Shown here one piece after another: positions 6,893-47,810 of a stretch of 64,000 bases of DNA. The stretch spans positions 370,510 to 434,509 of IMG/VR virus record IMGVR_UViG_3300032236_001850. One strand, given 5' to 3'. Made by a program: the position numbers and the translations under genes. Numbering within the stretch: the first letter of the stretch is position 1; the number at the start of each line of letters is the position of its first letter. Under the pieces are notes generated by a model. It worked only from the letters and a program-made list of their open reading frames with translations. It did not search any database and was not told the DNA's origin.

Positions 6893-7282
6893 ATGTCCAG
6901 AGAGATACTGATACAAGAAAATTATCCTAATGAACCTTGGAAAATGCTCGTTTGTTGTATATTATTAAACCAATCCCATAATAGATCTGTACGACCGATT
7001 TTAGACGCCGTATTTGAATTTATTCCTGATCCTGATTCTGCAATCAAGTGTGATGTTGAAAGTCTAGCAGCGATCATAAAACCAACCGGTTTGTACAACG
7101 TAAAGGCTAGAAGAATAAAATGGATGAGTGTGGGATACAAAAAAGGCTTTAAAAGAGTTACCGATCTACCAGGAATAGGTTTATATGGTAATGAATCCTG
7201 GGAGATATTTGTTAATGGTAATCTCGACATAAAGCCAACGGATAAAAAGCTTAGAGCTTATTTGGATGCCGTTTTATTTTGA
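6893..7282 (+). CDS. HhH-GPD DNA glycosylase, MBD4-like
   Basis: PWKMLVCCILLNQ, LPGIGLYG HhH motif, DKKL ending; no Fe-S cluster. Confidence 0.75.
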   Translation: MSREILIQENYPNEPWKMLVCCILLNQSHNRSVRPILDAVFEFIPDPDSAIKCDVESLAAIIKPTGLYNVKARRIKWMSVGYKKGFKRVTDLPGIGLYGNESWEIFVNGNLDIKPTDKKLRAYLDAVLF

Positions 7283-10127: not shown

Positions 10128-10595
10128 ATGGCTAACATTGACAACAGTTGCTCAGAGTTAAATATCGAGGATCTTTATTCAAAAAGTAGTGACACTCTTG
10201 GGGACATACTGAATTTACAAGCAGACACGCAAAGGAATGTTTATAATTATAACTTCGATGAAATGAATCTTCGAGAAGTTATGGAATTTTGGCATATGAA
10301 CACTCATGCAATGATAGATGAGATTCATGAAGCAACAGATGCTCTTGGCGGAATTAAGGATGGCAACGGTAATGCGATTTGGAAAAAATGGAAACAAGCT
10401 TATGATACCTACGGGTCTAAAAAATTCTCAGACCTATCACCAAGCGATCAACTTGAATGTAAATTCGAGGTTATAGATATGCTTCATTTTTTCATGAATT
10501 ATGCAATATCTATAGGTATGACACCATCTGAAATGTACAATATGTACATGAGTAAAAACCTGGAAAACAGGAGAAGACAACAAAATAATTATTAA
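10128..10595 (+). CDS. Dimeric all-alpha dUTPase/dCTPase (T4 gp56/MazG-like)
   Basis: [27 protein letters not shown]. Confidence 0.85.
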
Positions 10596-14122: not shown

Positions 14123-14791
14123 ATGGAAAACAACAAATGGTTTAATGACGATGTCATAAAAAAATTCGATGAATTTTTAAACGAGAGAGAATTACCAGAT
14201 TCTCAGGGGGATGTACTAGTTATGCTAGGAGCTCCTGGCTCCGGTAAAGGAACACTTTCAAAACAGCTGAATGAAAAATTTGGGATAAATCATATATCAA
14301 CTGGTGATCTAATAAGAAAATCCGATGATCCTGAATTGAAGAAAATAGTTGAGTCAGGAAAGTTCATATCCGATGAAATGATGCTTAAAATGCTAAGAAA
14401 AGAGCTAAAAAAGCTTGATCTTAATAAAGGTATAATTTTTGATGGATATCCAAGAACAATAAAACAAGCGAGAAAGCTTGATTCGTTATTGGGTAAATTG
14501 GGTCTTGGTTTAAATCATGCTATATTTATGGATCTTCCGGAGGATAAGGCTAAGGAGAGAATAAGAAATAGAGCTAAGAAGGAGGGAAGAAAGGATGATG
14601 CAAGTGATGAGGTTATAGATAAAAGATTTGCCGAATATCACGAGAAAACTTTTCCTCTTGTTGATTTTTACAAGAAAAGCAGAAAATTAATAAAAATTGA
14701 TGCTGATCTTGGTATGGAAGGAGTTCTTAAATCCATAGTTAAAAAGTTGGGTCTTAAAAAACCTAAAAAGAATAGAGATGAAAAAATCTAG
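14123..14791 (+). CDS. adk: Adenylate kinase with CTS-like N-terminal extension
   Basis: GAPGSGKGT, HISTGDLIR, DGYPRT, RKDD; leader IKKFDEFLNE. Confidence 0.9.
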   Translation: MENNKWFNDDVIKKFDEFLNERELPDSQGDVLVMLGAPGSGKGTLSKQLNEKFGINHISTGDLIRKSDDPELKKIVESGKFISDEMMLKMLRKELKKLDLNKGIIFDGYPRTIKQARKLDSLLGKLGLGLNHAIFMDLPEDKAKERIRNRAKKEGRKDDASDEVIDKRFAEYHEKTFPLVDFYKKSRKLIKIDADLGMEGVLKSIVKKLGLKKPKKNRDEKI

Positions 14792-15447: not shown

Positions 15448-16716
15448 ATGAGTACTAAAAATAAAAAGAAACAGAAAAAAGTAGCATCACCTATTAGTAT
15501 CCCTAGGCCAATCCCCAATAACGTTCAAGTTATAGATCTTTGTTTGGTTATGATTGTTAAAGACGAGGAAGACACCATGGAAAGATGTCTTAGAGCAGTT
15601 GCTCCTTATATTAAATATTGGGTGATTGTTGATACAGGTTCCAAAGATAAAACCATAGAGGTAATAAATAAAACGATGGAATCTTTGGGTATTCCTGGAG
15701 AACTTCACGAAAGACCTTGGGTAAACTTTGAAGTTAATAGAACGGAAAGTTTAAATCTAGCTAAAGGAAAATGTGATTATAGATGGATAATAGATGCGGA
15801 TGATACATTCATACCTGAAAATCCAAACATTAATCCATTTGCTGGTCTTGATAAAGGCCCTGATTGTTACCAGGTATTATATAAATTGAATAATCTTCAA
15901 TACCACAGAGCCCAAATAGTTAAATCTGACCAAAATTGGGTTTATAAAGGTGTACTGCACGAGTATCTTCATTTGGAAGATAATAGAGGTGAAATATTTC
16001 AGGGACAGATACCAAATGCTTTTGTTATAGCTGATATCTCGCCTCTTAAAAGAGCTGCTTCACTTGAGGAAAAATATGCAAATGATGCAAAAATACTTGA
16101 AAAAGCACTTATTGATGAGCCTAATAATGAGAGATATATGTTTTATCTAGCTCAGAGTTATAGAGATTCTGATCAGCTTGAAAAATCTATAGAGGCATAC
16201 GGCAAAAGAATTGATATGGGTGGATGGGAAGAGGAGGTTTATTATTCCATGTATATGATTGCTAAAATGAGAGAAAAGATGGGTGCGCCGATAGAGGAAG
16301 TTGCTAATCTTTATTCCAGAGCATGGGAATATAGACCTTCTAGATTAGAAGCAGTTTTCCACACTATGAGAAAATATCGGGAACAGAAAAGATTTCTGAT
16401 TGCATTTGCATATGGTGATGTCGCTATAAAAACAAGAGGAACCCAGGATATACTTTTTATCGAGGCTGAGATATGGCAATGGAGATTGCTCGATGAATAC
16501 TCTTTAGCTGCACATTATATCGGAAATCCAGAAATAGCATTGGAAAAAACAAATGCCATTATAACTGCTCCGTTTTTCAAAACCCTTCCTATGGATGAGC
16601 AAAATAGATTAAATAAAAACATGGATTTTTATAGAAAAGCTGCACAGGAAAAAGCTAAACAGGTACAACTTGCAAACATGAATGCTAAACCACAACCTAA
16701 GAATAGAAAAAAGTAA
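15448..16716 (+). CDS. GT2 glycosyltransferase with TPR repeats
   Basis: MIVKDE, VDTGS, DADD, GVLHE; TPR FYLAQSY. Confidence 0.85.
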   Translation: MSTKNKKKQKKVASPISIPRPIPNNVQVIDLCLVMIVKDEEDTMERCLRAVAPYIKYWVIVDTGSKDKTIEVINKTMESLGIPGELHERPWVNFEVNRTESLNLAKGKCDYRWIIDADDTFIPENPNINPFAGLDKGPDCYQVLYKLNNLQYHRAQIVKSDQNWVYKGVLHEYLHLEDNRGEIFQGQIPNAFVIADISPLKRAASLEEKYANDAKILEKALIDEPNNERYMFYLAQSYRDSDQLEKSIEAYGKRIDMGGWEEEVYYSMYMIAKMREKMGAPIEEVANLYSRAWEYRPSRLEAVFHTMRKYREQKRFLIAFAYGDVAIKTRGTQDILFIEAEIWQWRLLDEYSLAAHYIGNPEIALEKTNAIITAPFFKTLPMDEQNRLNKNMDFYRKAAQEKAKQVQLANMNAKPQPKNRKK

Positions 16717-28443: not shown

Positions 28444-29361
28444 ATGAAACCAGTTAAAGCAATATATGTGGATTGGCATATGCCAAAAAAGGATGCTGGG
28501 AAGAATATACCAGAAAAAAGACCATGGGAGATTGCCATGATTATAAGATCCGTTTATTTTGCTAAAAAATATAATGATCTTTCACCGGTTCTTTATTGTG
28601 ATCCTGATACATATTCATATTATGACGAGATTGGATTACTTAAACATTTCGACGAGGTTAAACCCATATTACCAACAAATCTTAATTTTGATGCCTCTGT
28701 ATTCTGGGCTGCTGGAAAATTTTATGCAATTCTTGATTGTAATGAGCCCTTTATATTAATAGATCTTGATGCTGAGGTTAGATTCAAAATAGATTTTGGT
28801 GATTGTGATATTTACTGTACACATCTGGAAAAAGTAATTAAGGATGATTTAAAATTCTATCCTGATGCTGAATATCTGGATCGGGATAACTATATAGCAA
28901 ATAAATTTGGTATAACCTGGAGCAATCATGCTTGTAACACATGTTTACTTGCTTTTAACGATCTTGATTTTGCCAAGGAGTATGCAACTATGGCTTTGGA
29001 TTTTATCGATCATATTTATGAACTTAATCCAGCATTTAGCAATGTTTCGTACATTGTTTTAATAGAGCAAAGATTCCTTTATGATTTGGCAATGAGTAGA
29101 GGAAAAAAGATAAATTGTCTCATTAGTGGAAACTATTTACCAACGAATCATACCGTTGGACTTCCTTCCTTTGAAGATTCAGATGTTGATGAAATTGCGG
29201 ATAAGGGATTTTTCCATGTTTGGGGTTTTAAAAACGACATAAAAAGAAGTAAGGATGTCGAGGATTCCTTTCTTGGTGATCTTGTAACTGGTGTTGATGA
29301 CATACATAATGATCTTATTTACTCAATTTCCATGAACCATAAATTATATATAGATAAATAA
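28444..29361 (+). CDS. GT-A-fold protein (DUF6734-like)
   Basis: FWAAGK, IDLD (DxD), EQRFL, HVWG. Confidence 0.6.
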   Translation: MKPVKAIYVDWHMPKKDAGKNIPEKRPWEIAMIIRSVYFAKKYNDLSPVLYCDPDTYSYYDEIGLLKHFDEVKPILPTNLNFDASVFWAAGKFYAILDCNEPFILIDLDAEVRFKIDFGDCDIYCTHLEKVIKDDLKFYPDAEYLDRDNYIANKFGITWSNHACNTCLLAFNDLDFAKEYATMALDFIDHIYELNPAFSNVSYIVLIEQRFLYDLAMSRGKKINCLISGNYLPTNHTVGLPSFEDSDVDEIADKGFFHVWGFKNDIKRSKDVEDSFLGDLVTGVDDIHNDLIYSISMNHKLYIDK

Positions 29362-29539: not shown

Positions 29540-30001
29540 GGGCCAACACGGTATTGATTGGCAGAGTTCGTTCTTTGAGATGCAGGCAGAGTTAGTATTG
29601 GAAACTCTTAAATAACCTATACAACGCTTTAAACGGCAAAAACAACGTTTGGGAAACTATCAACGCGTTTGGTACTCCCGTAGCTAAGACTGAGCTTGCG
29701 ATAGCGGCATAGTCGACCTGGTCTCACTTACCAAGGAAAGTAAAGGTGAAAATCCCGGGTGGCTCCCTCAAGACTTCGGTCGTCGTCAAGGCGTACCTTG
29801 AGCATCCAGATCCTAGAGATCTATACAGGGGGTGAAAGAAAACCGTTTTAGAAACATGTACGTAACATGTTGTTCCGACGTATGATACCTTTAGTCGTAA
29901 AAGAAGGGAATTATTTGGTAGCATTAGAAAAAGTTACTAAGCCTGTGAATGAGTCCTTTGGCTATCTGAACAAGACGAGGGTTCGAATCCCTCTTGGTCC
30001 A
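29540..30001 (+). ncRNA. ssrA: tmRNA (about 462 nt)
   Basis: Acceptor GGGCCAA/TTGGTCC-A with G3:U wobble; T-arm GAGGG-TTCGAAT-CCCTC; GCAGGC/GCCTGT helix; PK1 AGAGTT/AACTCT; tag ORF ends in AA-stop. Confidence 0.93.
29635..29712 (+). other. tmRNA tag reading frame GKNNVWETINAFGTPVAKTELAIAA*
   Basis: Resume codon GGC after TTAAAC, downstream of PK1. Confidence 0.8.
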
Positions 30002-30010
30002 CACGGAATT

Positions 30011-30040
30011 TCGAGGATCTTAATCGATCCTCGATTTTTT
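30011..30040 (+). terminator. Terminator after tmRNA
   Basis: TCGAGGATC-N6-GATCCTCGA-TTTTTT. Confidence 0.8.
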
Positions 30041-30067
30041 ATTAAATTAACTAAATCAAATCAAAAA

Positions 30068-30448
30068 ATGGAAGCTGTAATTATTTTATTAGTGTGTATC
30101 GTATTACCTGTTGTTATAATGGTAATAGGTATTAAGAAATCGAAAAAAGAAAGAATCGAGGAAAGAGACGAAATGTTTTATGAAGGTGACGTAAAGTTTG
30201 GAGAAAATGCTGACGGTACACCAATAGAAATCAATGACACTCCTGCTCCTATAGATGCTGTTGAAGAGGTTACTAAAATATTAACTGATGAGGTTGAAAA
30301 GATAACAAAGCCTAAAAAGAAAAAACCAGGTAGAAAGAAAAAATCTGAATTTCCTATAGAACCAGTAGCACCTAAACCAAAATCAAAAAGAGGTAGAAAA
30401 CCAAAGAATAAAGATAAGAAAGGTGGAGATCAGATGTTATTAAGCTAA
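30068..30448 (+). CDS. Membrane-anchored protein with Lys-rich tail
   Basis: True start is ATG 30068 (MEAVIILLV...); the track's extension overlaps the tmRNA. Confidence 0.65.
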   Translation: MEAVIILLVCIVLPVVIMVIGIKKSKKERIEERDEMFYEGDVKFGENADGTPIEINDTPAPIDAVEEVTKILTDEVEKITKPKKKKPGRKKKSEFPIEPVAPKPKSKRGRKPKNKDKKGGDQMLLS

Positions 30449-30487
30449 TACTATAAACTTAATAATTCACTATTGATTTACATCATA

Positions 30488-30519
30488 AGGCTCTATAATA
30501 TTTTAATAGAGCCTTTTTT
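30488..30519 (+). terminator. Rho-independent terminator
   Basis: AAGGCTCTAT..ATAGAGCCTTTTTT. Confidence 0.75.
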
Positions 30520-30539
30520 ATTATATCTAAATTATACCT

Positions 30540-30980
30540 ATGAAATTTTTAATCGCATTATTATTTTTTATATCCTTTGGATATTCACAAAAGTCTGGTA
30601 TTTGTGGTGCATCCTTTTCATATTCTAAGAAAAGTAACAGTATCCTACTAAATACCCCTATTTCATTATTTCAAACCGAGGATGCAGATTACCACGTTAG
30701 AGTTAGGCTGAGAAGAGAAGTTCCGATTGGTGCGATTAATGGTGTTGAATATGGAAACATGATAGAACAACCATTTTTTGAATATGATGGTTATAAAACA
30801 TCCATGTTTTGGGCATTTAGCACATTAACATCAGTAAAACATAAAGTAAAAAAGAAAGGCACAATAGACACTAATTTTGAACTATTTTACACCAAAAAAG
30901 GTGAGTATTTTATGACAATAGATAAAATGTGCTATGATAATGTAATAGAATCAAATGAGGTTTCAATAACAATAAAATAA
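30540..30980 (+). CDS. Secreted hypothetical protein
   Basis: Signal peptide ending GYS|Q. Confidence 0.55.
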   Translation: MKFLIALLFFISFGYSQKSGICGASFSYSKKSNSILLNTPISLFQTEDADYHVRVRLRREVPIGAINGVEYGNMIEQPFFEYDGYKTSMFWAFSTLTSVKHKVKKKGTIDTNFELFYTKKGEYFMTIDKMCYDNVIESNEVSITIK

Positions 30981-31717
30981 TGGAAGCATTTTTAGAAAAG
31001 ATAAATGGCGAGTGGTTGGATGATTTTGTTTATATAGCAAAACAACCATTAATAGATATGGGATATAAAATAGTCCCGTATGATGGTGATGATTTGGAAC
31101 ACACGCTAGTGATGAGAAATCCAGATCCCAACACTGATATTTGTATAGGATCTGTGCAGGGAACTGAAAGATTTTTTCAAGCCTGTGGAGTTGAGATCCC
31201 TAAATATTTGGGTTATCCTGAGCAGCTTAGAAAGTATCTTGGTAGAAAAATAGAAACAACAACCTTTGGGGAACTTGGTACAGATTTTCCATATTTTGTG
31301 AAGCCTGCTGAATCTATTAAAATGTTTACCGGTGATGTTGTGGATAATTCTAAACATCTTGAATACCTGGTTGCTTTTGATAAATGCCTTCCAGATACAC
31401 CCGTTATAAAATCAGAGGTCATGGAATTTCTCTCAGAATATAGAGTTTTTGTTAGTCATGGTAAAATCTATGACGTTAAACACTACAAAGGAACATGGAA
31501 GGAACATATTAGCTCTAATATCATTGAGTTAATGGTTAAGGATTACACAGACTGTCCTTCTGCATACACATTGGATGTGGGTCTGAATTCAAAAGGTCTA
31601 ACAAAGTTAGTTGAGGTGAATGATATGTGGGCTATAGGATCTTATGGTATGGATGGAAGGGACTATGCATTATTGTGTGCCAGAAGAATGAAAGAAATAT
31701 TAAAAAATTATAAATAA
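30980..31717 (+). CDS. ATP-grasp protein (DUF4343/R2K-like)
   Basis: FVKP, SEYRVFV, YTLDVG, LVEVND. Confidence 0.75.
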   Translation: MEAFLEKINGEWLDDFVYIAKQPLIDMGYKIVPYDGDDLEHTLVMRNPDPNTDICIGSVQGTERFFQACGVEIPKYLGYPEQLRKYLGRKIETTTFGELGTDFPYFVKPAESIKMFTGDVVDNSKHLEYLVAFDKCLPDTPVIKSEVMEFLSEYRVFVSHGKIYDVKHYKGTWKEHISSNIIELMVKDYTDCPSAYTLDVGLNSKGLTKLVEVNDMWAIGSYGMDGRDYALLCARRMKEILKNYK

Positions 31718-31750
31718 TTTTTTTATTCCGAATTTTTAATCTATATTTGC
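31718..31750 (+). promoter_or_regulatory. Bacteroidota-type promoter
   Basis: TTTTTTTATTCCG-N11-TATATTTGC. Confidence 0.7.
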
Positions 31751-31768
31751 ATCACTAAATTTAAAATT

Positions 31769-32275
31769 ATGAGCTTGAGACATCTAAAAAAAAGAATTAG
31801 TTTGGCCATGCCTAAACTTAAAAGAACAGTTAAAAGAGATATTTTTCAAATGTGTCCTAAGATGACAAGGGAGGAGAGGGCAATATCTGCAATGATACGA
31901 AATCTTTTGAGCAATCAGGAGAATAGAATAATTTACTCCATAAGAAGTAAATCTATAAGAATCCAAACCAAGGATAAAAAATATGTTGTTTCACTCACAA
32001 GCAGCTACATCAGGATAAATTTTGTTTTAATCTCGCTCAATGAAAGAATCGGTAACGTTCTTGTTGACCGAGTTATTGATAGAATGGAATCGGATATAGC
32101 AAATATGGATAATGATGTTATGTCAGATCAGAAAGAGTTTCTATCCGGGATGAATGATGTTTTTGTGAAAGCAAATGTCGAATCTGCTAAAAGATCACAG
32201 CTGATTAAAAATGCCTCATCCAGAAATATCGAAAGCACACTTTCTAGAATAATGAAAGAACCAATAAATGCCTAA
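31769..32275 (+). CDS. Hypothetical protein
   Basis: First gene after promoter. Confidence 0.5.
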   Translation: MSLRHLKKRISLAMPKLKRTVKRDIFQMCPKMTREERAISAMIRNLLSNQENRIIYSIRSKSIRIQTKDKKYVVSLTSSYIRINFVLISLNERIGNVLVDRVIDRMESDIANMDNDVMSDQKEFLSGMNDVFVKANVESAKRSQLIKNASSRNIESTLSRIMKEPINA

Positions 32276-32542
32276 AAACGAAAGTTACGGAACTCATGAG
32301 GAATTGAAGGATGTAGCTGTAATTATGAGAAAAGCAATGTTTGATTTTATAATGGGTAAAATAACAAAGTATGCTTTTCTCCAGATATATTATGGGTATG
32401 AGTGCTTCCTACTTGAACATGGCTATGTCGAGACTGAAGATCCTTATTTTGAGATGGATCTCCCTGATGGTGAAAGATTCGTTCATGATGCATTATACAA
32501 CCATAATGTTGTTTGGAAAGAAATTAAAAAATAAATTATAAT

Positions 32543-33250
32543 ATGTTGAAGATAACACTAATTAGTGATACACACAATAAACATCGTCAGTTAACGGAAG
32601 ATCTTCCTGGTGGAGATCTTCTTCTTTTTGCTGGTGACATAATGGGTACAGGGTACAAAAAGGAGGAACTTCGGGATTTCTGTGAATGGTTTAATTCACT
32701 GGATCAATATGAAACTAAAATATTCATAGCTGGAAATCACGATCGCATATTCGAAAATTTTCCTGTTGAAGCTAATATGATAGTTAATGAATATCCAAAT
32801 ATTACCTATCTACAGGATGATTGCGATTCCCATTTTATAAATGGTAGTCAAGATAATTTTGTTAGTATCTATGGATCACCTTGGCAACCATGGTTTTATA
32901 ACTGGGCTTTCAATTTACCAAGAAGAGGTCCTGGGCTTATGTCTAAATGGGAAGCTATACCGGAGCTAACAGATATTCTAATAACTCATGGTCCAGCTTT
33001 CGGATATTTAGATACTGTTGAAGGTAGAAGAAATGAGAATCTTGGGTGTGAATTATTAACCGAGAGAATAAAGGAGATAAAACCAAAAATCCACCTTTGT
33101 GGCCACATCCATACGGGTTATGGTTATGTTTTCGATGGGGATACACACTTCTTTAATGCGTCGGTTCTTAATGAGGATTATAACTATGCTCATAAACCAT
33201 TTGTCTTCGAATGGGATCCTGTTACTAATGAGATAATTTTTCCGGAATAA
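32543..33250 (+). CDS. Calcineurin-like metallophosphoesterase
   Basis: SDTH, AGD, AGNHD, THGP, GHIH. Confidence 0.9.
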   Translation: MLKITLISDTHNKHRQLTEDLPGGDLLLFAGDIMGTGYKKEELRDFCEWFNSLDQYETKIFIAGNHDRIFENFPVEANMIVNEYPNITYLQDDCDSHFINGSQDNFVSIYGSPWQPWFYNWAFNLPRRGPGLMSKWEAIPELTDILITHGPAFGYLDTVEGRRNENLGCELLTERIKEIKPKIHLCGHIHTGYGYVFDGDTHFFNASVLNEDYNYAHKPFVFEWDPVTNEIIFPE

Positions 33251-33309
33251 ATTCATATACTGTTGAAATTTATCCAGATTTTTGTCATATAAAAAGACAA
33301 ACATCATAA

Positions 33310-34089
33310 ATGAAAACCTTCTCTAAACCTTCTGAAGCAATAAAATGGACAAAGGAAAGACTATCCAATTATGGATATGTTGTTAAAACCGAAAGATGGC
33401 AAGGCATCGAATCACCCGACGACATGTGGGAAACTATGAATCATTCTTTTCAGTTTTTTATACCTGATACACTAGAGGAACTTAAAGAGGAGGTTAGACC
33501 AAACCTTCCCTGGGCTGATGATCATTTCGGTGAAAGAATTAGTGGAAGTCCACTTAATCCGCCGCCTTCTCATAATTGGTGGCCATTTGCCCAAAAGAAT
33601 AACGAACAGTTTGGTGGTAACGAAAAATTCTCTCATACATATCCAGAGAGAATATGGCCAAAGAATGCTGGTGAAAATGGAGATGATGCTATACTTTCTG
33701 GTATTAGATTTGCTTATGGTGATTTTGGAGATGTTATAGATTTAATGTATAGAGAACCTTTCACTAGACAAGCATTTTTACCCATATGGTTTCCCGAAGA
33801 TACTGGTACAGTTCATGGAGAAAGGGTTCCATGCACAATAGGTTATCACTTTATGAGAAGAGGTGAAAATCTTCATATTGTTTATTATATCAGATCCTGC
33901 GATTACATAAGACACTTCAGGGACGATGTTTATATGGCCTGTAGAAAGCTGATGTATATCCTGGATATGTTGAAGCTAAGAGATTGGGAAAGATGGAAAG
34001 ATGTTAAACCTGGATATTTTGCAATGCACATAACTTCGTTACATTGTTTCAATAGTGAGAAAGGAATATTAAAACAATCAAAATTATAA
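33310..34089 (+). CDS. Thymidylate-synthase-family enzyme, probably dCMP-modifying
   Basis: TRQA, PC (catalytic Cys), RSCD..D with Asp at the TS Asn position, SLH. Confidence 0.7.
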   Translation: MKTFSKPSEAIKWTKERLSNYGYVVKTERWQGIESPDDMWETMNHSFQFFIPDTLEELKEEVRPNLPWADDHFGERISGSPLNPPPSHNWWPFAQKNNEQFGGNEKFSHTYPERIWPKNAGENGDDAILSGIRFAYGDFGDVIDLMYREPFTRQAFLPIWFPEDTGTVHGERVPCTIGYHFMRRGENLHIVYYIRSCDYIRHFRDDVYMACRKLMYILDMLKLRDWERWKDVKPGYFAMHITSLHCFNSEKGILKQSKL

Positions 34090-34677
34090 AGATGGAAAAA
34101 CCTGTAATATTAGGACCGGATTTCAAGGCCATAAACGAACCTTCGGAAAGCATAAAAAAGCACTATGCTAAACTTTATGAAAGAAATCAAAATAAATTCA
34201 TAAGAAGATCCAAACTTGAACAATCCCACTTGGGAAGTGAGTTTGAACACAATGGTAGAACCCTTAGACTTATAGGATCAGCTGATAGTGATAGAATGGT
34301 GGTTGTTGACGAATCAGATAACACTTACTATTTTATACATTCGGATATCCCAACCAATGCAATATTAAACAAAGAATAAGATTTTGTTAGAATATTATAT
34401 AAAAACTATAGACCCAAGATCACATATAGGCGTATGTGAAATTATCTCTTTAATGGGGATAGAAATACTTGAGGATGGATTTGGTGATTCTACTGATGAT
34501 TACTATGGTATTTTTAAAGTTTTCTCTGATACTGATGCTCTTGACGTTCTTTCCGACCTTCCGGATGTCCAAATAGATTTTCCTAGCGAAAGAGTAATTA
34601 GATAAAAATCCTGATAATACTTGGATATATAAGTCAAATAAACTTTAGGTGTATTGGGCGATAAACCAAAAGTAATT

Positions 34678-35061
34678 ATGGACGAAAAAGAAATAACTCA
34701 AGCTTTTCTGATGAAGGAGATATTAGGCGAGATCAAAGATCTCAAATCTAATATGCCTAATGGAGAAATAAAAATTCTTCAAACCAGCATGGATGATATA
34801 AAGAGGGAGCAAAAATCCATCAAAGATGACATGTCTGATATAAAGAAGAAATTATTAGATCCAGATGATGGTGTAATAGTAAAGGTTAACGAAAACACAA
34901 AGTTTAGGATCCAAGAACAGGATCGCTATGACGATTATATGCAATTCACTATCGATATTCAGGAGATGAAAACCTGGAAGAAGGGAGTTAATCAGGCATT
35001 GTGGATTCTTTTCGGTGCACTCATAGCAGTAGCTGCTAAAGTAATATTTGGCGTAGGGTAA
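34678..35061 (+). CDS. Coiled-coil protein with C-terminal TM helix (late promoter)
   Basis: Heptads plus ALWILFGALIAVAA; GATATATA at 34624; ATG 34678 preferred. Confidence 0.5.
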   Translation: MDEKEITQAFLMKEILGEIKDLKSNMPNGEIKILQTSMDDIKREQKSIKDDMSDIKKKLLDPDDGVIVKVNENTKFRIQEQDRYDDYMQFTIDIQEMKTWKKGVNQALWILFGALIAVAAKVIFGVG

Positions 35062-35065
35062 TATC

Positions 35066-35810
35066 ATGGATATAGATTCACACACATTTAGAGATTTTAT
35101 TTATATAAAAGATAAAAGTGGTGTGTATCTTGGTGATCTTTTTTACGAGAGAATTAAATTAGCTCTAGCAAAGAATAAAAAACTAGCTTCCCTTTTTACC
35201 TCGGTGGATAATGATCCAAACAACCCAGGCACCTCACAAATATTTATGTGCACTATAGAGAGTGAAAATTTTCCCACATTTCTTCGAGAATATTTAAGCT
35301 GGTGTGAATCCAAGGAGGATTACGAGAAATGTTCAGAAATAATGAGTTTAAATATTTTATGATTCATTATGAAAGATTCGGATATAAAAAAATATGACAT
35401 TTACTTAAAATTATATTCCGAAATAATGAGTAATGGGGGAAAAACCAAAACCATTTCGGAAATAAAAGAATGTCTGGAAACTTTTGAAGCTTTGGAAGAT
35501 TATGACAAATGTAAGGATCTTCTAAATATCATAAGAATGGAACGTAAGAATAAAGATGTTAATAAACAGTAGAGAGAATCAAAGATTTGTTTTTGAAAAC
35601 GCATACAATAGTATGCTTAAATACGGAAAGGAAAGCATGATGTCTCACAAAATATTATCAAGAAGAGACGAGATAGAATCCTCCATGATAAAATATTATG
35701 AATCAACGGAGGAATTTGAAAAGTGTAAATTCATATTGGATTTCTTTAAGGACTTGGAAGAAACACTACAAAAAGGACTGGAAACGGTTGATATAGAAGA
35801 CATTAAGTAA
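35066..35810 (+). CDS. Three tandem small genes (35066-35362, 35369-35572, 35556-35810), each with a UVR-like ExxE(D/E)(Y/F)(E/D)KC motif
   Basis: ESKEDYEKCSEI, EALEDYDKCKDL, ESTEEFEKCKFI. Confidence 0.6.
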
Positions 35811-35825
35811 ATATACCATAAAAAA

Positions 35826-35861
35826 ATAAAGGTTTCAGCAATATTACTGAAACCTTTATTT
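35826..35861 (+). terminator. Terminator hairpin overlapping a GAAAC-N18-TATAAA promoter
   Basis: AATAAAGGTTTCAG..CTGAAACCTTTATT. Confidence 0.65.
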
Positions 35862-35903
35862 TGTTGCTAGATATAAATATCATTAAACATTAAAAAACAA
35901 TTA

Positions 35904-37475
35904 ATGAAATTTTCAGATCTAACTACAGAACAGATTACAACAATTTCGGATGTTTATTGGGATAGAAATTTAGCTTGGGATGATAGAATGGCCAAACTTA
36001 AAAATTATCTAGGTAAATCTGAAAGAACTGTTCAATCCTGGGTTTCCAAATTGGGAATAACGGAGAAGGCTTTGCAAGAATCCCCGCAATTTATAAAAGC
36101 TAAAGAAAGAAAATTCAATAAGAAGAAGAAAAGATTCATTATCACATGGGCTCAGAACGATACGCCTGTACACGATACTTTCATCGAGAATATTGAAGCC
36201 TATGCTGATTTTATAAATGCAGATATTCATATAATAGCAGGAAGATATAAAAATCCAACATCAGTATTTAGTGATAGGAATTATGATACTTGGTCGGAAA
36301 GAATCGAACAGTATTTGGATGCTGGTAGACACGAGGTTCATAAGCACATGTGGATCATGTCCGATGTTAAGATTCAACCAACTGCGGTGGATCCAATGAC
36401 AGGATTACAAGGTATGAGTGGTATAAATTCATGCGTTTTTGGATCACCCAAGGTTCACATGGAAACAATTCCCGTATTGGAGGGAAATCTACCAAAGATG
36501 ATGATGACTACTGGAGCATGTACAGTTAATAATTATACAGATTCTAAAGCTGGTAAAAAAGGTGAATTTCACCACACTCTTGGTTTTGTTGTTATAGAAA
36601 TAAAGGACAAGGACACATTCTTTGCCAGACAAGTTACTGCAAATGATTATGGTGATTTCACGGATCTTTATTATAATGTTTCCTATGATGCAGGTGAGGA
36701 GAGAGGTTTGGTAAAAAGAATCGAAAAGGTTTCTGCTGCCATATTAGGAGACCTACACTATGGTCAACATGACGAGAGAGTGATAAGTAAGACTTTGGAT
36801 TTATTTTCTCTTATACATCCAGAAAACGTTGTTTTACACGATGTCTTTGATGGTCTTTCAATTAACCATCACGAATCGAAAGATCCGTTCATTCAATTCC
36901 AAAGGGAGATTGATGGAACTAACTCACTAAAGAAGGAAGTTGATGAAATGCTGGAAGGCTTAGAGGTATTTAAAGATTATAATACAATCATAGTTAGAAG
37001 TAACCACGATGACTTTTTGGACAGATGGTTAAAAGGCACAGACTGGAGAAAAGCTTCAACGTTAAAGAACTCAATAGAGTACATGGAATACAGTGCTTTG
37101 TTACTTAAAGGTAAAGCACCAAATGGTATAATCCCATATCTAATAAATGAAAAATTCCCAAATTATATAACTTTAGGTCGTAGCGATAGTTTTGTTATAA
37201 ATGGATGGGAACTTGGACAACATGGTGATATAGGTTCCAATGGAACTAGAGGATCATTACTTCAGTTTAGAAAATTAAACACAAAGATAGTTGTTGGCCA
37301 CTATCATTCACCAGGTAGAAAAGACGGAGCTTTAGCCGTTGGTACATCAACCAAATTAAGAGTTAATTACAACATAGGACCTAGTGGATGGCTTCAATCT
37401 CACGTCATTATACATGAGGATGGGAAAGCACAACATATAAACTTCATAAAAGGAGAATTTACAACTTTAAAATAA
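35904..37475 (+). CDS. Large metallophosphoesterase-fold nuclease (T5 A1-like) with N-terminal HTH
   Basis: GDLH, HDVFDG, SNHD, HGD, GHYHSP; AQNDT and GEFHH resemble A1-like proteins as I recall them. Confidence 0.55.
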   Translation: MKFSDLTTEQITTISDVYWDRNLAWDDRMAKLKNYLGKSERTVQSWVSKLGITEKALQESPQFIKAKERKFNKKKKRFIITWAQNDTPVHDTFIENIEAYADFINADIHIIAGRYKNPTSVFSDRNYDTWSERIEQYLDAGRHEVHKHMWIMSDVKIQPTAVDPMTGLQGMSGINSCVFGSPKVHMETIPVLEGNLPKMMMTTGACTVNNYTDSKAGKKGEFHHTLGFVVIEIKDKDTFFARQVTANDYGDFTDLYYNVSYDAGEERGLVKRIEKVSAAILGDLHYGQHDERVISKTLDLFSLIHPENVVLHDVFDGLSINHHESKDPFIQFQREIDGTNSLKKEVDEMLEGLEVFKDYNTIIVRSNHDDFLDRWLKGTDWRKASTLKNSIEYMEYSALLLKGKAPNGIIPYLINEKFPNYITLGRSDSFVINGWELGQHGDIGSNGTRGSLLQFRKLNTKIVVGHYHSPGRKDGALAVGTSTKLRVNYNIGPSGWLQSHVIIHEDGKAQHINFIKGEFTTLK

Positions 37476-37481
37476 AAATCA

Positions 37482-38069: not shown

Positions 38070-38070
38070 T

Positions 38071-38903: not shown

Positions 38904-38915
38904 GGATATATAATA

Positions 38916-39000
38916 TCAATTGTATTGAAGGTGCCTTTAGTACTTGATGTCCCGGGTCTAACGACCCTCGAGATGTTTGAATGAGCATCAAAGGGATTTT
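38916..39000 (+). ncRNA. Structured 5' leader complementary to the 3' UTR of the same gene
   Basis: TTGATGT/GCATCAA stem, GGGTC-TAAC-GACCC hairpin; 38919-38943 pairs with 39894-39916. Confidence 0.6.
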
Positions 39001-39020
39001 AAAAAATAAATAAGGTAAAA

Positions 39021-39884: not shown

Positions 39885-39958
39885 TCTAGTATCGTACAAA
39901 GGCACCACGATACAATAAAATTTAATCTAAGTGGATATATAATAATAAAATCTACAAA

Positions 39959-40351: not shown

Positions 40352-40395
40352 ATCATTAGAAAGCAGCAAAGATAAATTAAAAAAAATACACAAAA

Positions 40396-40830: not shown

Positions 40831-40848
40831 TTCCAAATAAATAAAAAC

Positions 40849-40874
40849 AAAACCAGCCAAAGGCTGGTTTTTTT
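40849..40874 (+). terminator. Rho-independent terminator
   Basis: AAAACCAGCC-AAA-GGCTGGTTTTTTT. Confidence 0.8.
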
Positions 40875-40913
40875 GTGAAACATAATTATTATTTAAAATA
40901 TGATATCTGATTA

Positions 40914-44568: not shown

Positions 44569-44569
44569 A

Positions 44570-45767: not shown

Positions 45768-46013
45768 ATGAATAATTCTGATAACAAAATACCAGAACTT
45801 AATCTAAAGATGGAAACTAGGACTATGGAAGCAAAGACTAGAGTACTACGTACTCCTTATGTTTTAGTAACAACTCCTTATATGATACTTTCTGATAAAG
45901 ATGGAACTAGAAGAGTGTGGACAAGAAACAAAAGAAGCATAATTCTGTATTATCTTTATAAAATAACAAGGATTGAATGGTTTATAAAAAAATATAATGA
46001 ACAGGCTAGATAA
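45768..46013 (+). CDS. Small protein carrying a gp23 major-capsid-like segment
   Basis: IPELNLKMETRTMEAKTRVLRTPY resembles the gp23 ExxFxIxKxxxEAKSRxLKAxY segment. Confidence 0.5.
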   Translation: MNNSDNKIPELNLKMETRTMEAKTRVLRTPYVLVTTPYMILSDKDGTRRVWTRNKRSIILYYLYKITRIEWFIKKYNEQAR

Positions 46014-47247
46014 ACAATACACAGATCTACTTGCAACCATATTGGAGCATGGGGTAGATAAAAAAGATAGAACAGGAACCGGCACAAGGTCAATATTTGG
46101 TTATACCATCCGACATAATATGAAAGATGGGTTTCCACTTCTTACAACCAAGAAAATGTCATTCAAAACAATCGTAACAGAACTTATCTGGTTCTTACGA
46201 GGTGATACAAACATTAAGTTTTTGGTTGATAATAATTGTCATATTTGGGATGGTGATGCTTATAAAGCGTTTGGAAAATGGAAACAAGAAACAGACGCTA
46301 AAATAAGAAAAGAAAACCCAACAATAGATTTTCAGCCTTTGGAATATGAATCACAAGAAGAATTTATCAACAAAATAAAAACAGATGATGAGTTTGCTAA
46401 GAAGTGGGGTGAGTTAGGTCCAATTTATGGAGCTCAATGGAGAAGTTGGGGAGAACATTTACCTCAGGATCCTCAATATAAATTAGCAGCTAGAACATAT
46501 ATCGATCAGATCCATAACTCTATAGATTTGCTTATAATTGACCCTGACTCAAGAAGAAACAGAGTTTCAGCATGGAATGTTGGTGAACTGAACATGATGG
46601 TTCTTCCGCCATGTCATACTGATTTTCAATTTTATTCCGTTGAGATGACAAACGAAGAAAGGTGTCAATATTTTGCAAGTAGTCTGAATAAGAATATTTC
46701 ATTTACAAAAAATCTTACCAATAAAAAACTTGATGAACTTGGTTGTCCCTCACGTAGATTGTCACTAATGTGGAATCAGCGTTCGGTAGATACTTTCTTG
46801 GGTTTACCCTTTAATATTGCTTCCTATGGATTATTATTAGAAATAATTGGGAGATGTGTTAATATGATTCCTGACCAGTTGATTGGTAATTTGGGTGATG
46901 TTCATTTGTATTCAAATCACATTCAGCAAGCTAAAGAACAGATTGGAAGAAAATATACACACGAGGAAAGAACCTCCATGTTGATCTCCGCTATGGGTGA
47001 AGAAAAATATAATAAAGCACTTGGTGAACTGATGCCATTTGGTGGAGGTATGAGTGAATATTATGACTCTTATAACATACCTCACAGAACTAGAGAACCC
47101 TTTGATTTACCTAAATTGATTCTAAATCCAATATTTTTAGCGGATCTGGAACATAAAGGATTTGATGCAGCTATAAATGGCGAGATTAATTTCAAAATTG
47201 AAAATTATCAAGCTCATCCACATATACCAGCACCTCTAAGCAACTAA
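45997..47247 (+). CDS. thyA: Thymidylate synthase with insertions
   Basis: DRTGTGT, LPPCH, QRSVD..GLPFN, DVHLYSNH. Confidence 0.95.
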   Translation: MNRLDKQYTDLLATILEHGVDKKDRTGTGTRSIFGYTIRHNMKDGFPLLTTKKMSFKTIVTELIWFLRGDTNIKFLVDNNCHIWDGDAYKAFGKWKQETDAKIRKENPTIDFQPLEYESQEEFINKIKTDDEFAKKWGELGPIYGAQWRSWGEHLPQDPQYKLAARTYIDQIHNSIDLLIIDPDSRRNRVSAWNVGELNMMVLPPCHTDFQFYSVEMTNEERCQYFASSLNKNISFTKNLTNKKLDELGCPSRRLSLMWNQRSVDTFLGLPFNIASYGLLLEIIGRCVNMIPDQLIGNLGDVHLYSNHIQQAKEQIGRKYTHEERTSMLISAMGEEKYNKALGELMPFGGGMSEYYDSYNIPHRTREPFDLPKLILNPIFLADLEHKGFDAAINGEINFKIENYQAHPHIPAPLSN

Positions 47248-47426: not shown

Positions 47427-47810
47427 ATGAAAGCAATAATAGCAGTAAATGAGCTAGGATACATAGGTCTAAATGATTCACTTCCTTGGAGATGCTCCGA
47501 GGATCTTAAGCACTTCAAGAAAATGACGGATGGTTGCACACTGTTGGTGGGTCATAACACCTCCCAGAAAATGCCACCACTTCCAGGTAGAACAGTAATT
47601 AACGACGAAAGAGGTGTTATCATATCTGAGGGTATAGATTGGTGCATAGGTGGTAAAAAGACCTATGAGAAATACTGTCATCTATTCACTGAGCTTCACA
47701 TCTCAAGAATAGAAAACAAATCTGAAGGTGATACAGTTTATCCGGATCTGTCCTCATTGAATCCAGAATGCCAAATTTTTGAATATAATTTCAAAGAAAA
47801 TCAGAAATAA
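47427..47810 (+). CDS. folA: Dihydrofolate reductase
   Basis: IG..LPW..EDLKHFK, LPGR, IGG, GDT. Confidence 0.9.
   Translation: MKAIIAVNELGYIGLNDSLPWRCSEDLKHFKKMTDGCTLLVGHNTSQKMPPLPGRTVINDERGVIISEGIDWCIGGKKTYEKYCHLFTELHISRIENKSEGDTVYPDLSSLNPECQIFEYNFKENQK

What the first reader, a model, noticed from the sequence alone, without database searches (positions are those of the whole stretch)
33310..34089. Second TS-family enzyme with Asp at the specificity position: candidate cytosine-modification pathway
Seen: RSCDYIRHFRDD aligns with RSVDTFLGLPFN of the canonical ThyA at 45997, placing Asp where TS has Asn. Known: this Asn/Asp switch separates dUMP from dCMP enzymes (T4 gp42). The His at the conserved Gly position is atypical. 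The window also has a gp56-like dUTPase/dCTPase, two GT-A proteins (15448, 28444), a P-loop kinase and an MBD4-like glycosylase suited to deaminated modified C. Inference: the genome may carry methyl-, hydroxymethyl- or hydroxy-cytosine, possibly glycosylated.
Basis: partly seen in the sequence, partly recalled or inferred. Interest (0 to 1): 0.7.

Follow-up and report, generated by a model that had tools for sequence, protein, structure and literature searches.

The report
Divergent phage cytosine-type thymidylate-synthase homolog
A 434-kb freshwater jumbo phage encodes, besides an ordinary thymidylate synthase, a very diverged relative whose active site looks built for deoxycytidylate, so the phage may build a modified cytosine into its DNA, though no member of this large enzyme group has yet been tested.

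Summary
ORF 33310-34089 (+, 259 aa) folds as a thymidylate synthase (TS; pLDDT 94.5) and carries Asp206 where TS has Asn177. The motif HFRDD matches T4 gp42's GFRND in register.

It belongs to a large, uncharacterised, mostly phage clade: more than 4,200 proteins, scoring below Pfam's TS threshold. The clade keeps the Cys nucleophile, the Arg/Ser phosphate clamp, the Ser+Arg pair that marks 2'-deoxy substrates, and Asp169 and Trp80. It also has its own invariant residues: Arg at the Leu143 position and His at Gly173.

The genome also encodes a full-length T4 gp56-like dCTPase/dUTPase, an adenylate-kinase-family NMP kinase, a dCMP deaminase, and a canonical ThyA plus DHFR. That is the T4 set of pre-replicative enzymes. 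No DNA methyltransferase was found.

The most likely role is C5 one-carbon modification of dCMP, to hydroxymethyl or methyl. The product, and whether the DNA is modified at all, remain untested. 5-Hydroxycytosine is disfavoured because Asp169 is kept. Glycosylation has no support: there are no T4-type glucosyltransferases, and glycosyltransferases are not linked to the clade. An Xp12-like route (methyl-dCMP deaminated to dTMP) is a serious rival, because a dCMP deaminase sits directly downstream of the gene in most other lineages.

The parts
33310..34089 (+). Diverged TS-superfamily enzyme of 259 aa; the candidate dCMP C5-modifying enzyme. Key residues: Cys175 (nucleophile), Thr176, Arg172 (Leu143 position), Arg195-Ser196-Cys197-Asp198 (RSxD), His202 (Gly173 position), Asp206 (Asn177 position), Arg153 (Arg126' position), Tyr111, Trp91, His245/Phe247.
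   Evidence: ORF. PHROG 160 at 7e-25. Pfam TS 17.9 bits, below the 24.3 cut-off. Fold. Conservation. Register against T4 gp42. Homodimer model.
10128..10595 (+). T4 gp56-like all-alpha NTP pyrophosphatase; candidate dCTPase/dUTPase. It is the only dUTPase-type gene found in the genome.
   Evidence: 32% identity to T4 gp56 over the full length, E 5e-26. PHROG 173 at 6.7e-17. Homologous to the MazG/dUTPase_2 genes next to the TS-like gene in phages Zuko and Emalyn. No trimeric dUTPase in the genome.
14123..14791 (+). Adenylate-kinase-family P-loop NMP kinase; candidate kinase for the (modified) dCMP. This role is inferred.
   Evidence: Pfam ADK at 3.9e-39. Weak PHROG hits to thymidylate and guanylate kinases.
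45997..47247 (+). Canonical thymidylate synthase ThyA of 416 aa, with insertions. It has Leu at position 143, His at 147 and Asn at 177 (LPPCH ... RSVDTFLGLPFN).
   Evidence: Pfam TS at 2.1e-83. Motifs.
47427..47810 (+). Dihydrofolate reductase.
   Evidence: PF00186 match at G000 417936-418265, which is window 47427-47756; 70.8 bits summed.
15448..16716 (+). GT2-family glycosyltransferase. Not shown to act on DNA or to be linked to the TS-like clade.
   Evidence: Pfam GT2 at 1.4e-7. PHROG 13126 'beta-1,4-glycosyltransferase' at 1.6e-28.
28444..29361 (+). It is syntenic only in close relatives.
   Evidence: Pfam DUF6734 at 5.4e-12. Atlas returns DUF6734 clusters only. Neighbour cluster present in only 2 of 18 TS-like groups.
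6893..7282 (+). A link to modified cytosine is speculative.
   Evidence: PF00730 at 4.5e-8, at G000 377459-377638, which is window 6950-7129.

Best explanation
ORF 33310-34089 most likely encodes a homodimeric enzyme of the thymidylate-synthase superfamily that acts on 2'-deoxycytidylate rather than dUMP.

Proposed mechanism. Cys175 adds to C6 of the pyrimidine. Asp206 reads the cytosine N3/N4 face. Arg195, Ser196 and Arg153' from the partner subunit hold the 5'-phosphate. A one-carbon unit from methylene-tetrahydrofolate is then placed on C5. Asp198 and Trp91, the folate-contacting residues, are kept.

The product is most likely 5-hydroxymethyl-dCMP, less likely 5-methyl-dCMP.

Proposed pathway. 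The enzyme would work with the gp56-like dCTPase/dUTPase (10128), an NMP kinase (14123), a dCMP deaminase elsewhere in the genome, and the separate canonical ThyA/DHFR pair that makes dTMP. Together these form a T4-style pre-replicative pathway that puts a C5-modified cytosine into phage DNA.

What is shown: the fold, the residue identities and their conservation, the gene set, and a dimer model.
What is inferred: the substrate, the cofactor, the product and the consequence for DNA.
For: Fold and core residues.
- TS fold at high confidence.
- Cys175, Arg195, Arg172, Asp206 and His245 are invariant, and Ser196, Asp198, Tyr111 and Trp91 are at least 90% conserved, across 90 diverse members.

Cytosine specificity.
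- Asp206 aligns with T4 gp42 Asp179 and E. coli Asn177 in an ungapped register shared with the Xp12 dCMP methylase: RSxD-x7-D.
- The Asn/Asp switch sets uracil against cytosine specificity in E. coli TS, L. casei TS, T4 CH and MilA (PMC5175136, PMC8670742, PMC13326640).
- Position 147 is Thr/Ser, as in gp42, not His. It is the second residue associated with modified-cytosine contigs (PMC8670742).
- The best sequence-profile matches in the PDB are cytosine enzymes: MilA at 9e-10. Against Xp12 the profile comparison gives 8.8e-12.

Sugar specificity. Ser196 plus Arg153 is the pair that marks deoxy substrates, against Ala+Lys in the CMP enzyme MilA (PMC5175136).

Dimer. The homodimer model scores ipSAE 0.85, against a best control of 0.00. 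The runs agree in at least 96% of contacts and pLDDT is at least 85. In calibration the mark was reached by 21 of 30 solved homodimers and 0 of 23 monomers. Arg153' and Gln154' touch Ser196 of the partner.

Gene set.
- A canonical Asn177 ThyA and a DHFR are in the same genome, so dTMP synthesis is already covered. Relatives G001 and G004 also carry both genes.
- A full-length gp56 homolog is present, along with an NMP kinase and a dCMP deaminase.
- In other lineages the clade sits next to gp56-like/dUTPase_2 genes, P-loop kinases and dCMP deaminase.

Other.
- A family member has an intein inserted exactly at the catalytic Cys, which is typical of functionally important sites.
- The 434-kb genome has no DNA methyltransferase and no marked palindrome avoidance. 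This is weak evidence.
Against: - No member of the clade has been assayed. No paper was found on any phage that carries it.
- The protein scores below Pfam's TS threshold.
- The catalytic Glu58/Glu60, described as 'extremely conserved' in TS, CH, dUH and MilA (PMC5175136), appears as Asn65 (Asn/Asp/Gln in the clade) in the E-x-x-W register.
- The Leu143 position is an invariant Arg, not the Asp/Glu of known hydroxymethylases. His202 and Arg201 line the site, and Tyr209 is Phe. A different co-substrate or chemistry is therefore possible.
- The chain ends 14 residues after His245, so the TS C-terminal lid is missing.
- No glycosyltransferase or other tailoring enzyme is linked to the clade.
- Well-studied carriers, such as mycobacteriophage Muddy and many Gordonia phages, have not, to my knowledge, been reported to have modified DNA.
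- The gp56 homolog may simply be the phage's dUTPase.
- DNA modification could not be examined, because the runs are held as contigs only.
Confidence: 0.5

Rival explanations
1. Xp12-like dCMP methylase. The enzyme makes 5-methyl-dCMP, which either replaces dC in the DNA or is deaminated by the phage dCMP deaminase to dTMP. This alternative thymidylate route has been described for phage Xp12. In that case the DNA may carry 5mC, or no modification at all.
For: - In Xp12 the Asp177 TS homolog is followed directly by dCMP deaminase and DHFR.
- In 12 of 18 sequence groups of this clade, a dCMP deaminase lies immediately downstream of the TS-like gene.
- The siphophages that carry it have no other annotated TS.
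- No tailoring enzymes are linked to the clade.
- The family profile aligns better to the Xp12 enzyme (8.8e-12) than to gp42 (1.3e-7).
- The titles of Kuo 1982 and Wang & Ehrlich 1982, cited in PMC11946847, document this route.
Against: - In this genome the deaminase is about 130 kb away, and a canonical ThyA and DHFR already supply dTMP. A second thymidylate route would therefore be redundant.
- The Xp12 enzyme is a near-canonical TS (138 bits to Pfam) with a 63-residue C-terminal segment after the conserved His. This clade has 14 residues there and lacks the Glu58 equivalent.
Confidence: 0.2
2. It acts on dUMP, either as a diverged true thymidylate synthase or as a dUMP hydroxymethylase, as the database annotations ('thymidylate synthase') imply.
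For: - It is annotated as TS in 100 or more phage records.
- The adjacent dCMP deaminase would supply dUMP.
- It is the only TS-like gene in the small siphophages.
Against: - Asp206 is present in 87 of 89 members and Thr/Ser is at position 147. All characterised uracil enzymes have Asn at 177 (PMC5175136).
- The window genome has a canonical ThyA and DHFR. That makes a second TS redundant and sits poorly with replacing T by hmU.
Confidence: 0.1
3. A new chemistry within the TS fold. The enzyme still works on a cytosine nucleotide, but with a different co-substrate or product, in the way the flavin-dependent 5hodCMP synthases departed from folate. In siphophages it may work as a heterodimer with the diverged TS-fold paralog encoded upstream.
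For: - The clade has invariant residues of its own near C5 and the cofactor site: Arg172, Arg201, His202, and the motif H72-F-x-E75-R76...N83-P84.
- The Glu58 register is not acidic.
- The C-terminus is truncated.
- There is precedent for cofactor switching in this superfamily (PMC13326640).
- A TS-fold paralog lies upstream in 9 or more groups.
Against: - Asp198 (the Asp169 position) and Trp91 (the Trp80 position), both folate contacts, are conserved.
- The D169N signature of the flavin enzymes is absent (PMC13326640).
- There is no positive evidence for any alternative cofactor.
Confidence: 0.15
4. A catalytically dead TS-like protein with a regulatory or structural role.
For: It is extremely diverged from TS. 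It scores below the Pfam cut-off and there is no Glu at the Glu58 register.
Against: - The Cys nucleophile and the phosphate- and base-binding residues are invariant across more than 4,000 proteins.
- An intein targets the catalytic Cys.
- A TS-type shared-site dimer is predicted.
Confidence: 0.03

Closest known systems
T4 gp42, deoxycytidylate 5-hydroxymethyltransferase (PDB 1B5E/1B49)
   Same: - TS fold and similar size (246 against 259 aa).
- Cys nucleophile followed by Thr.
- RSxD...FR[N/D]D motif with Asp at the specificity position.
- Ser/Arg pair for deoxyribose.
- The genome also has a gp56 homolog, a dCMP deaminase, and a canonical TS plus DHFR.
   Different: - About 16% identity. The profile E-value is only 1e-7 to 2e-5.
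- Arg instead of Asp at the Leu143 position.
- His instead of Gly at the Gly173 position.
- Asn/Asp/Gln instead of Glu60.
- Phe instead of Tyr218.
- A shorter C-terminus.
- No linked glucosyltransferase.
Xanthomonas phage Xp12 dCMP methyltransferase (QNN97214)
   Same: - Asp at position 177.
- Non-hydrophobic residue at position 143: Asn in Xp12, Arg here.
- The gene order TS homolog then dCMP deaminase is shared with most lineages of the clade.
   Different: - The Xp12 enzyme is a near-canonical TS (138 bits to Pfam) that keeps the Glu58 equivalent, Gly173 and a long C-terminal segment.
- In the window genome the deaminase is not adjacent to the TS-like gene.
MilA, CMP 5-hydroxymethylase (PDB 5B6D/5JNH)
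   Same: It is the best structural and profile match in the PDB: Foldseek 8e-14 with TM 0.71, and hmmsearch 9e-10. It also has Asp at the specificity position.
   Different: MilA has Ala176/Lys133, which favour ribose. This clade has Ser196/Arg153, the deoxy pair. MilA belongs to antibiotic biosynthesis, not to phage replication.
5hodCMP synthases (RB69 gp48, DLP3 gp80, HY126 AfhB; PDB 9IQU/9IQC)
   Same: Short phage TS-fold enzymes acting on dCMP, with Asp at position 177. Structural match at E 1.5e-12.
   Different: Their diagnostic D169N change is absent here: Asp198 is conserved. They have Glu at position 143 and use a flavin (PMC13326640).
Canonical thymidylate synthase ThyA (the window's own gene at 45997)
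   Same: Same fold and the same covalent-catalysis residues: Cys, Arg166, Ser167, Asp169, Tyr94, Trp80, His207.
   Different: ThyA has Asn177, His147, Leu143, Gly173, Glu58, Tyr209 and the C-terminal lid. All of these differ or are missing in the TS-like protein.

Membership tests
Thymidylate synthase superfamily (fold level) | TS alpha/beta fold | tested here: met
   AlphaFold pLDDT 94.5. Foldseek E 1e-11 to 1e-14 and TM 0.6-0.71 to MilA, T4 CH and TS structures.
Thymidylate synthase superfamily (fold level) | Catalytic Cys (E. coli C146), with Arg166/Ser167 and Arg126' from the partner subunit binding the phosphate | tested here: met
   Counts out of 89: Cys175 87, Arg195 88, Ser196 84, Arg153 88. 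In alignment A1, Cys175 and Arg195 are invariant. Arg127 is Gln154.
Thymidylate synthase superfamily (fold level) | Obligate homodimer with shared active sites | tested here: met
   Model only. ipSAE 0.85 against a best control of 0.00; at least 96% contact agreement between runs; pLDDT at least 85. In calibration the mark was reached by 21 of 30 solved homodimers and 0 of 23 monomers. Residues 153/154 of one copy touch 196 of the other. Resemblance to solved TS dimers may contribute to the score.
Thymidylate synthase superfamily (fold level) | Score above the Pfam PF00303 gathering threshold | tested here: not met
   17.9 bits against a 24.3 cut-off. Most homologs carry no precomputed Pfam domain.
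Thymidylate synthase superfamily (fold level) | Catalytic Glu (E. coli E58 / T4 E60 / MilA E68) | tested here: inconclusive
   In the E-x-x-W register the clade has N65-L-P-W68, with Asn in 52, Asp in 23 and Gln in 5 of 89. Another conserved Glu (E41, E75 or E113) might substitute in three dimensions. The model coordinates could not be inspected.
T4 gp42-type dCMP hydroxymethylase | Asp at the Asn177 position (gp42 Asp179), which selects cytosine | tested here: met
   Asp206 is present in 87 of 89 members, in an ungapped register RSxD-x7-D.
T4 gp42-type dCMP hydroxymethylase | Acidic residue at the Leu143 position (admits water, giving a hydroxymethyl product) | tested here: not met
   Arg172 is invariant. 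The rule comes from PMC13326640. It is not absolute, since the Xp12 methylase has Asn at this position.
T4 gp42-type dCMP hydroxymethylase | Ser169/Arg123' pair, giving preference for 2'-deoxyribose | tested here: met
   Ser196 and Arg153. The rule comes from PMC5175136.
T4 gp42-type dCMP hydroxymethylase | Methylene-THF-dependent formation of 5hm-dCMP | not testable with these tools
   Needs an enzyme assay.
5hodCMP synthase (RB69 gp48 / AfhB) | Asn at the Asp169 position (D169N) | tested here: not met
   Asp198 is present in 85 of 89 members. The rule comes from PMC13326640.
Xp12-type dCMP methyltransferase | Asp177 in an otherwise canonical TS core, with the C-terminal segment and a Glu58 equivalent | tested here: not met
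   The Asp is present, but the core is diverged: 14 residues after the conserved His against 63 in Xp12, and no Glu in the E-x-x-W register.
dUMP enzymes (ThyA, SPO1-type dUMP hydroxymethylase) | Asn at position 177 | tested here: not met
   Asp206.
MilA/BcmA CMP hydroxymethylases | Ala at Ser167 and Lys at Arg126', giving preference for ribose | tested here: not met
   Ser196 and Arg153. The rule comes from PMC5175136.
T4-style cytosine-replacement pathway (system level) | dCTPase (gp56), dNMP kinase, dCMP deaminase, and a separate TS plus DHFR | tested here: met
   gp56 homolog at E 5e-26. ADK-family kinase. dCMP deaminase at G000 273645. ThyA. DHFR. The substrate specificities of these enzymes were not tested.
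T4-style cytosine-replacement pathway (system level) | DNA glucosyltransferase acting on 5hmC | tested here: not met
   No PF09198 or PF11440 match in the genome. The GT2 and DUF6734 genes are present but not linked to the clade.
T4-style cytosine-replacement pathway (system level) | Modified cytosine in virion DNA | not testable with these tools
   The runs holding this DNA are kept as contigs only. There are no raw reads or signal data.

The most novel reading that the evidence does not exclude
The clade is a new catalytic class of the TS superfamily. It would make a C5-modified deoxycytidylate by a mechanism that differs from both gp42 and the flavin hydroxylases: an Arg/His-lined site, no Glu58 and no C-terminal lid. 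Thousands of uncultivated freshwater jumbo phages, and many cultured siphophages (relatives of mycobacteriophage Muddy, Gordonia, Serratia and Clostridium phages), would then carry an unrecognised non-canonical cytosine. In the siphophages the enzyme may work as a heterodimer with a second, degenerate TS-fold subunit.
Probability: 0.2. Interest if true: 0.8.

Novelty: new variant of a known kind. Interest (0 to 1): 0.55.

Why it matters
If the clade modifies dCMP, three things follow.
1. A very large and currently mis-annotated group of 'thymidylate synthases' would mark phages with non-canonical cytosine. The group has more than 4,200 clusters at 90% identity and 629 at 50%. Carriers include abundant freshwater jumbo phages and relatives of phages used in therapy.
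2. The catalytic range of the TS fold would widen again, shortly after the discovery of the flavin-dependent 5hodCMP synthases.
3. The residue rules used to predict products would be tested. Here Asp177 holds, while the Leu143 and Asp169 rules give no clear call.

It would also bear on restriction evasion, on sequencing and cloning bias, and on annotation practice. If instead the enzyme feeds an Xp12-like methyl-dCMP to dTMP route, a 1982 biochemical curiosity would turn out to be a widespread phage strategy.

Tried and rejected
- **Sequencing runs.** I searched public runs for raw reads or nanopore data that could reveal modification. All 14 holders are pond or freshwater DNA runs kept as contigs, with no RNA holders.
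- **Palindrome and restriction-site avoidance in the 434-kb genome.** All 4-mer palindromes have observed/expected 0.77-1.0, with no difference between GC-containing and AT-only palindromes. This is compatible with protected DNA but uninformative.
- **DNA methyltransferases.** None found for C5, N4/N6 or Dam types. This is suggestive at best.
- **T4 alpha- and beta-glucosyltransferases.** None found.
- **Literature on carriers** (Serbin, Emalyn, Zuko, Muddy, GTE2, PMBT14). Only genome announcements, with no DNA-modification data. A search for earlier computational surveys found nothing relevant.
- **hhalign of the family profile against the window's own ThyA.** Not significant, probably because of ThyA's large insertions. 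The register was therefore taken from T4 gp42 and Xp12 instead.
- **Fusion partners of longer family members.** These turned out to be inteins and LAGLIDADG insertions, not functional fusions.
- **The siphophage upstream partner 'X'.** An HMM search of the window genome found no copy.
- **5-Hydroxycytosine synthase reading.** Rejected on the Asp169 criterion.
- **CMP (ribo) substrate.** Rejected on the Ser/Arg criterion.
- **The C-terminal-lid argument for hydroxymethyl over methyl.** I considered it but give it little weight, because short archaeal TS-like proteins are among the best structural matches.
Full report
**1. The observation**

It contains RSCDYIRHFRDD at residues 195-206. The canonical ThyA at 45997-47247 contains RSVDTFLGLPFN at residues 262-273. 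With no gap, Asp206 falls on the Asn177 position (E. coli numbering).

The similarity is homology, not chance:
- PHROG 160 'thymidylate synthase' matches at 7e-25.
- A 90-sequence alignment gave an AlphaFold model with mean pLDDT 94.5.
- Foldseek finds MilA (8e-14, TM 0.71), phage HY126 dCMP hydroxylase AfhB, T4 dCMP hydroxymethylase and many TS structures, all at 13-16% identity.
- Archaeal short 'putative TS' proteins lead the Swiss-Prot models.

The protein is nevertheless far from canonical TS. Pfam PF00303 scores 17.9 bits against a cut-off of 24.3. By comparison, T4 gp42 scores 59.6 and the Xp12 dCMP methylase 138.

**2. What it belongs to**

The window is the last 64 kb of a complete 434,509-bp virus genome with direct terminal repeats, from IMG/VR. 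It is found in pond and freshwater metagenomes. GC content is 33-35%.

The window is a replication and nucleotide-metabolism region. It holds a split B-family polymerase, both RNR subunits, both topoisomerase II subunits, a clamp, UvdE, RNase HII, Fpg, ThyA and DHFR.

The TS-like protein has more than 4,200 homologs at 90% clustering, mostly about 258 aa, on contigs up to 373 kb. An exhaustive search of 50% representatives gave 629 clusters at E<=1e-3 and 144 at E<=1e-30. This is a compact clade, well separated from ordinary TS.

Among cultured phages it occurs at about 28-46% identity in 116 records:
- 68 Gordonia phages
- mycobacteriophages of the Muddy/FF47 type
- Serratia Serbin-like phages
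- Streptomyces Zuko
- Brevundimonas, Pseudomonas and Clostridium perfringens phages

Nearly all are annotated 'thymidylate synthase'. I found no paper that tests any of them.

**3. Active-site anatomy**

Conservation was measured across 89-90 diverse members. The register comes from hhalign against T4 gp42 (probability 94%) and Xp12 (97.5%), checked by motif search.

| Residue here | Equivalent (E. coli unless stated) | Note |
|---|---|---|
| Cys175 | Cys146 | nucleophile; invariant in A1 |
| Thr176 (Thr/Ser) | His147 | Thr in gp42 |
| Arg172 | Leu143 | invariant; Asp in gp42, Asn in Xp12 |
| Arg195-Ser196-x-Asp198 | Arg166-Ser167-x-Asp169 | phosphate clamp and folate contact |
| Arg201, His202 | Leu172, Gly173 | clade-specific |
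| Asp206 | Asn177 (gp42 Asp179) | 87 of 89 members |
| Arg153, Gln154 | Arg126', Arg127' | from the partner subunit |
| Tyr111 | Tyr94 | conserved |
| Trp91 | Trp80 | folate contact |
| His245, Phe247 | His207, Tyr209 | Tyr replaced by Phe |

Published, experimentally grounded rules can be read off these positions:
- Asp against Asn at position 177 selects cytosine against uracil (PMC5175136, PMC8670742, PMC13326640).
- Position 147 is the second residue associated with modified-cytosine contigs (PMC8670742).
- Ser167 plus Arg126' mark deoxy substrates, against Ala+Lys in the CMP enzyme MilA (PMC5175136).
- D169N marks the flavin-dependent 5hodCMP synthases (PMC13326640).

Applied here, the rules give a cytosine base, a deoxyribose sugar, and not a 5-hydroxylase. 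The Leu143 rule (hydrophobic gives methyl, acidic gives hydroxymethyl) gives no call, because the residue is Arg. The rule is also not absolute, since the Xp12 methylase has Asn at that position.

There are deviations. The 'extremely conserved' catalytic Glu58/60/68 appears as Asn65 (Asn/Asp/Gln) in the E-x-x-W register. The clade has its own invariant motif H72-F-x-E75-R76...N83-P84. The chain ends 14 residues after His245, against 30 in gp42, 63 in Xp12 and 113 in the window's ThyA.

A homodimer model passes the tool's test: ipSAE 0.85, best control 0.00, at least 96% contact agreement, pLDDT at least 85. In calibration the mark was reached by 21 of 30 solved homodimers and 0 of 23 monomers. 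The model places Arg153' and Gln154' against Ser196 of the partner, as in TS. Likeness to solved TS dimers may inflate this score.

**4. Genomic company**

*In this genome.*
- A full-length homolog of T4 gp56 dCTPase/dUTPase lies at 10128-10595: 32% identity, E 5e-26. It is the only dUTPase-type gene found.
- An adenylate-kinase-family NMP kinase lies at 14123.
- A dCMP deaminase lies at genome position 273,645.
- A canonical ThyA with Asn177 and a DHFR are present.
- Relatives G001 (373 kb, complete) and G004 also carry both ThyA and the TS-like gene.

This is the T4 enzyme set. The presence of a normal dTMP pathway argues against the TS-like enzyme being the phage's thymidylate synthase or a T-replacing dUMP hydroxymethylase.

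*Across the clade.* I fetched 80 IMG/VR loci and added four phage records and the window. I then clustered all neighbours within 10 kb and counted them over 18 sequence groups of the TS-like protein. The neighbours shared by the most groups were:
- dCMP deaminase, immediately downstream (12 groups)
- DNA polymerase I (12 groups)
- an unannotated protein of about 300 aa, immediately upstream (9 groups)
- a dUTPase_2/gp56-like pyrophosphatase (7 groups)
- DnaB, RecA, gp32 and FEN

P-loop kinases are adjacent in the four phage records examined. No glycosyltransferase, carbamoyltransferase or other tailoring enzyme recurs. The genome has no T4-type glucosyltransferase. The GT2 gene at 15448 and the DUF6734 gene at 28444 are not linked to the clade.

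**5. Interpretation**

The best-supported reading is a dCMP-specific C5 one-carbon transferase working in a T4-like pre-replicative pathway. The product cannot be called from sequence. I lean to hydroxymethyl, because residue 143 is polar and there is no C-terminal lid. Both arguments are weak, since Xp12 has Asn at 143 and short archaeal TS-like proteins exist.

The main rival is an Xp12-like methylase. In Xp12 the Asp177 homolog is followed by dCMP deaminase and DHFR, and old biochemistry describes dTMP made by deaminating 5-methyl-dC nucleotides (titles cited in PMC11946847). The tight TS-like then deaminase arrangement in most lineages, and the lack of any other TS in the siphophages, fit that route. 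In the jumbo phage the deaminase is distant and ThyA is present, so DNA modification is the more economical role here.

A third possibility is a departure in chemistry, suggested by the Arg172/Arg201/His202 lining and the missing Glu. Retention of Asp169 and Trp80 argues that folate is still used.

Supporting but weak: no DNA methyltransferase of any class in 434 kb, and no marked palindrome avoidance.

Not testable here: whether the DNA is modified, because only contigs of the source runs are held.

**6. Verdict**

- A cytosine-directed TS homolog in a T4-like enzyme set: yes.
- A gp42 orthologue: no.
- Hydroxy-cytosine: disfavoured.
- Glycosylation: unsupported.
- Actual DNA modification: unknown.

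The enzyme is a member of a large, untested clade that differs from every characterised TS-family enzyme at several catalytic positions. I therefore rate it a new variant of a known kind, of moderate-to-good interest. A cheap decisive experiment exists: heterologous expression followed by nucleoside LC-MS.

Noticed in passing
Protein P0121 (homolog); equivalent to window residue Cys175 (window about 33832): A family member of 636 aa carries an intein inserted exactly before the catalytic Cys (..GGRVP | CFTAGT...SVHN | CTIGYHF..). The enzyme's nucleophile therefore doubles as the intein's +1 residue. Other members (P0129, P0137, P0217, P0241, P0259) carry an in-frame LAGLIDADG insertion near query residue 100.
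   Followed up: partly
L001:5192-6001, L003:3877-4938, L004:4038-4877, L005:3994-4911, L087:1041-1940 and others: In siphophages, the gene just upstream of the TS-like gene is an unannotated protein of 270-350 aa. It is itself a very diverged TS-fold protein (Atlas structure TM 0.65). hhalign aligns one of its Cys residues with Cys175, RAsE with RSCD, and an Asp with Asp206, at probability 50%. This suggests tandem TS-fold paralogs and possibly a heterodimer. The window's genome has no copy.
   Followed up: partly
window 8620-10026 and 24353-25498: The B-family DNA polymerase is encoded in two separate ORFs about 14 kb apart: an exonuclease plus N-terminal polymerase part, and a C-terminal polymerase part. 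The RNR, kinase, GT2, topoisomerase II, UvdE, DnaJ and clamp genes lie between them.
   Followed up: no
whole genome G000 (434,509 bp): No C5, N4/N6 or Dam-type DNA methyltransferase and no trimeric dUTPase were detected in a complete 434-kb phage genome. 4- and 6-mer palindromes are barely avoided (observed/expected at least 0.67). CpG observed/expected is 0.64.
   Followed up: partly
window 45997-47247: The canonical ThyA is 416 aa, with large insertions relative to the 266-position Pfam model, and extra C-terminal sequence. A 259-nt stretch of it is 82% identical to the ThyA of Flavobacterium phage vB_FspM_immuto. That is the only nucleotide-level link of window region 30000-50000 to any phage record.
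   Followed up: no
window 34092-34379: A 95-aa ORF starts 2 nt after the TS-like stop codon. It is conserved in the same position in 40 related loci (3 TS-like sequence groups). It has no Pfam or PHROG match.
   Followed up: no
window 25812-27287, 30980-31717, 32543-33250: Two ATP-grasp enzymes (one RimK-like, one R2K clade family 2) and a calcineurin-like metallophosphoesterase lie just upstream of the TS-like gene. The R2K enzyme and the phosphoesterase flank it closely. For the phosphoesterase the synteny is limited to close relatives. A role in base tailoring is conceivable but has no support.
   Followed up: no
window 1938-3971, 52559-53437, 57645-58211: Three further genes: an RNA-ligase-like domain fused to a cytidylyltransferase-like domain (677 aa), a radical SAM protein, and a HAD domain of the 'Swiss Army Knife' RNA-repair type. 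Together these hint at an RNA-repair module.
   Followed up: no
window 33251-33309: The leader of the TS-like gene is AT-rich and has no Shine-Dalgarno motif. Together with the Flavobacterium-phage similarity of ThyA, this would fit a Bacteroidota host.
   Followed up: no
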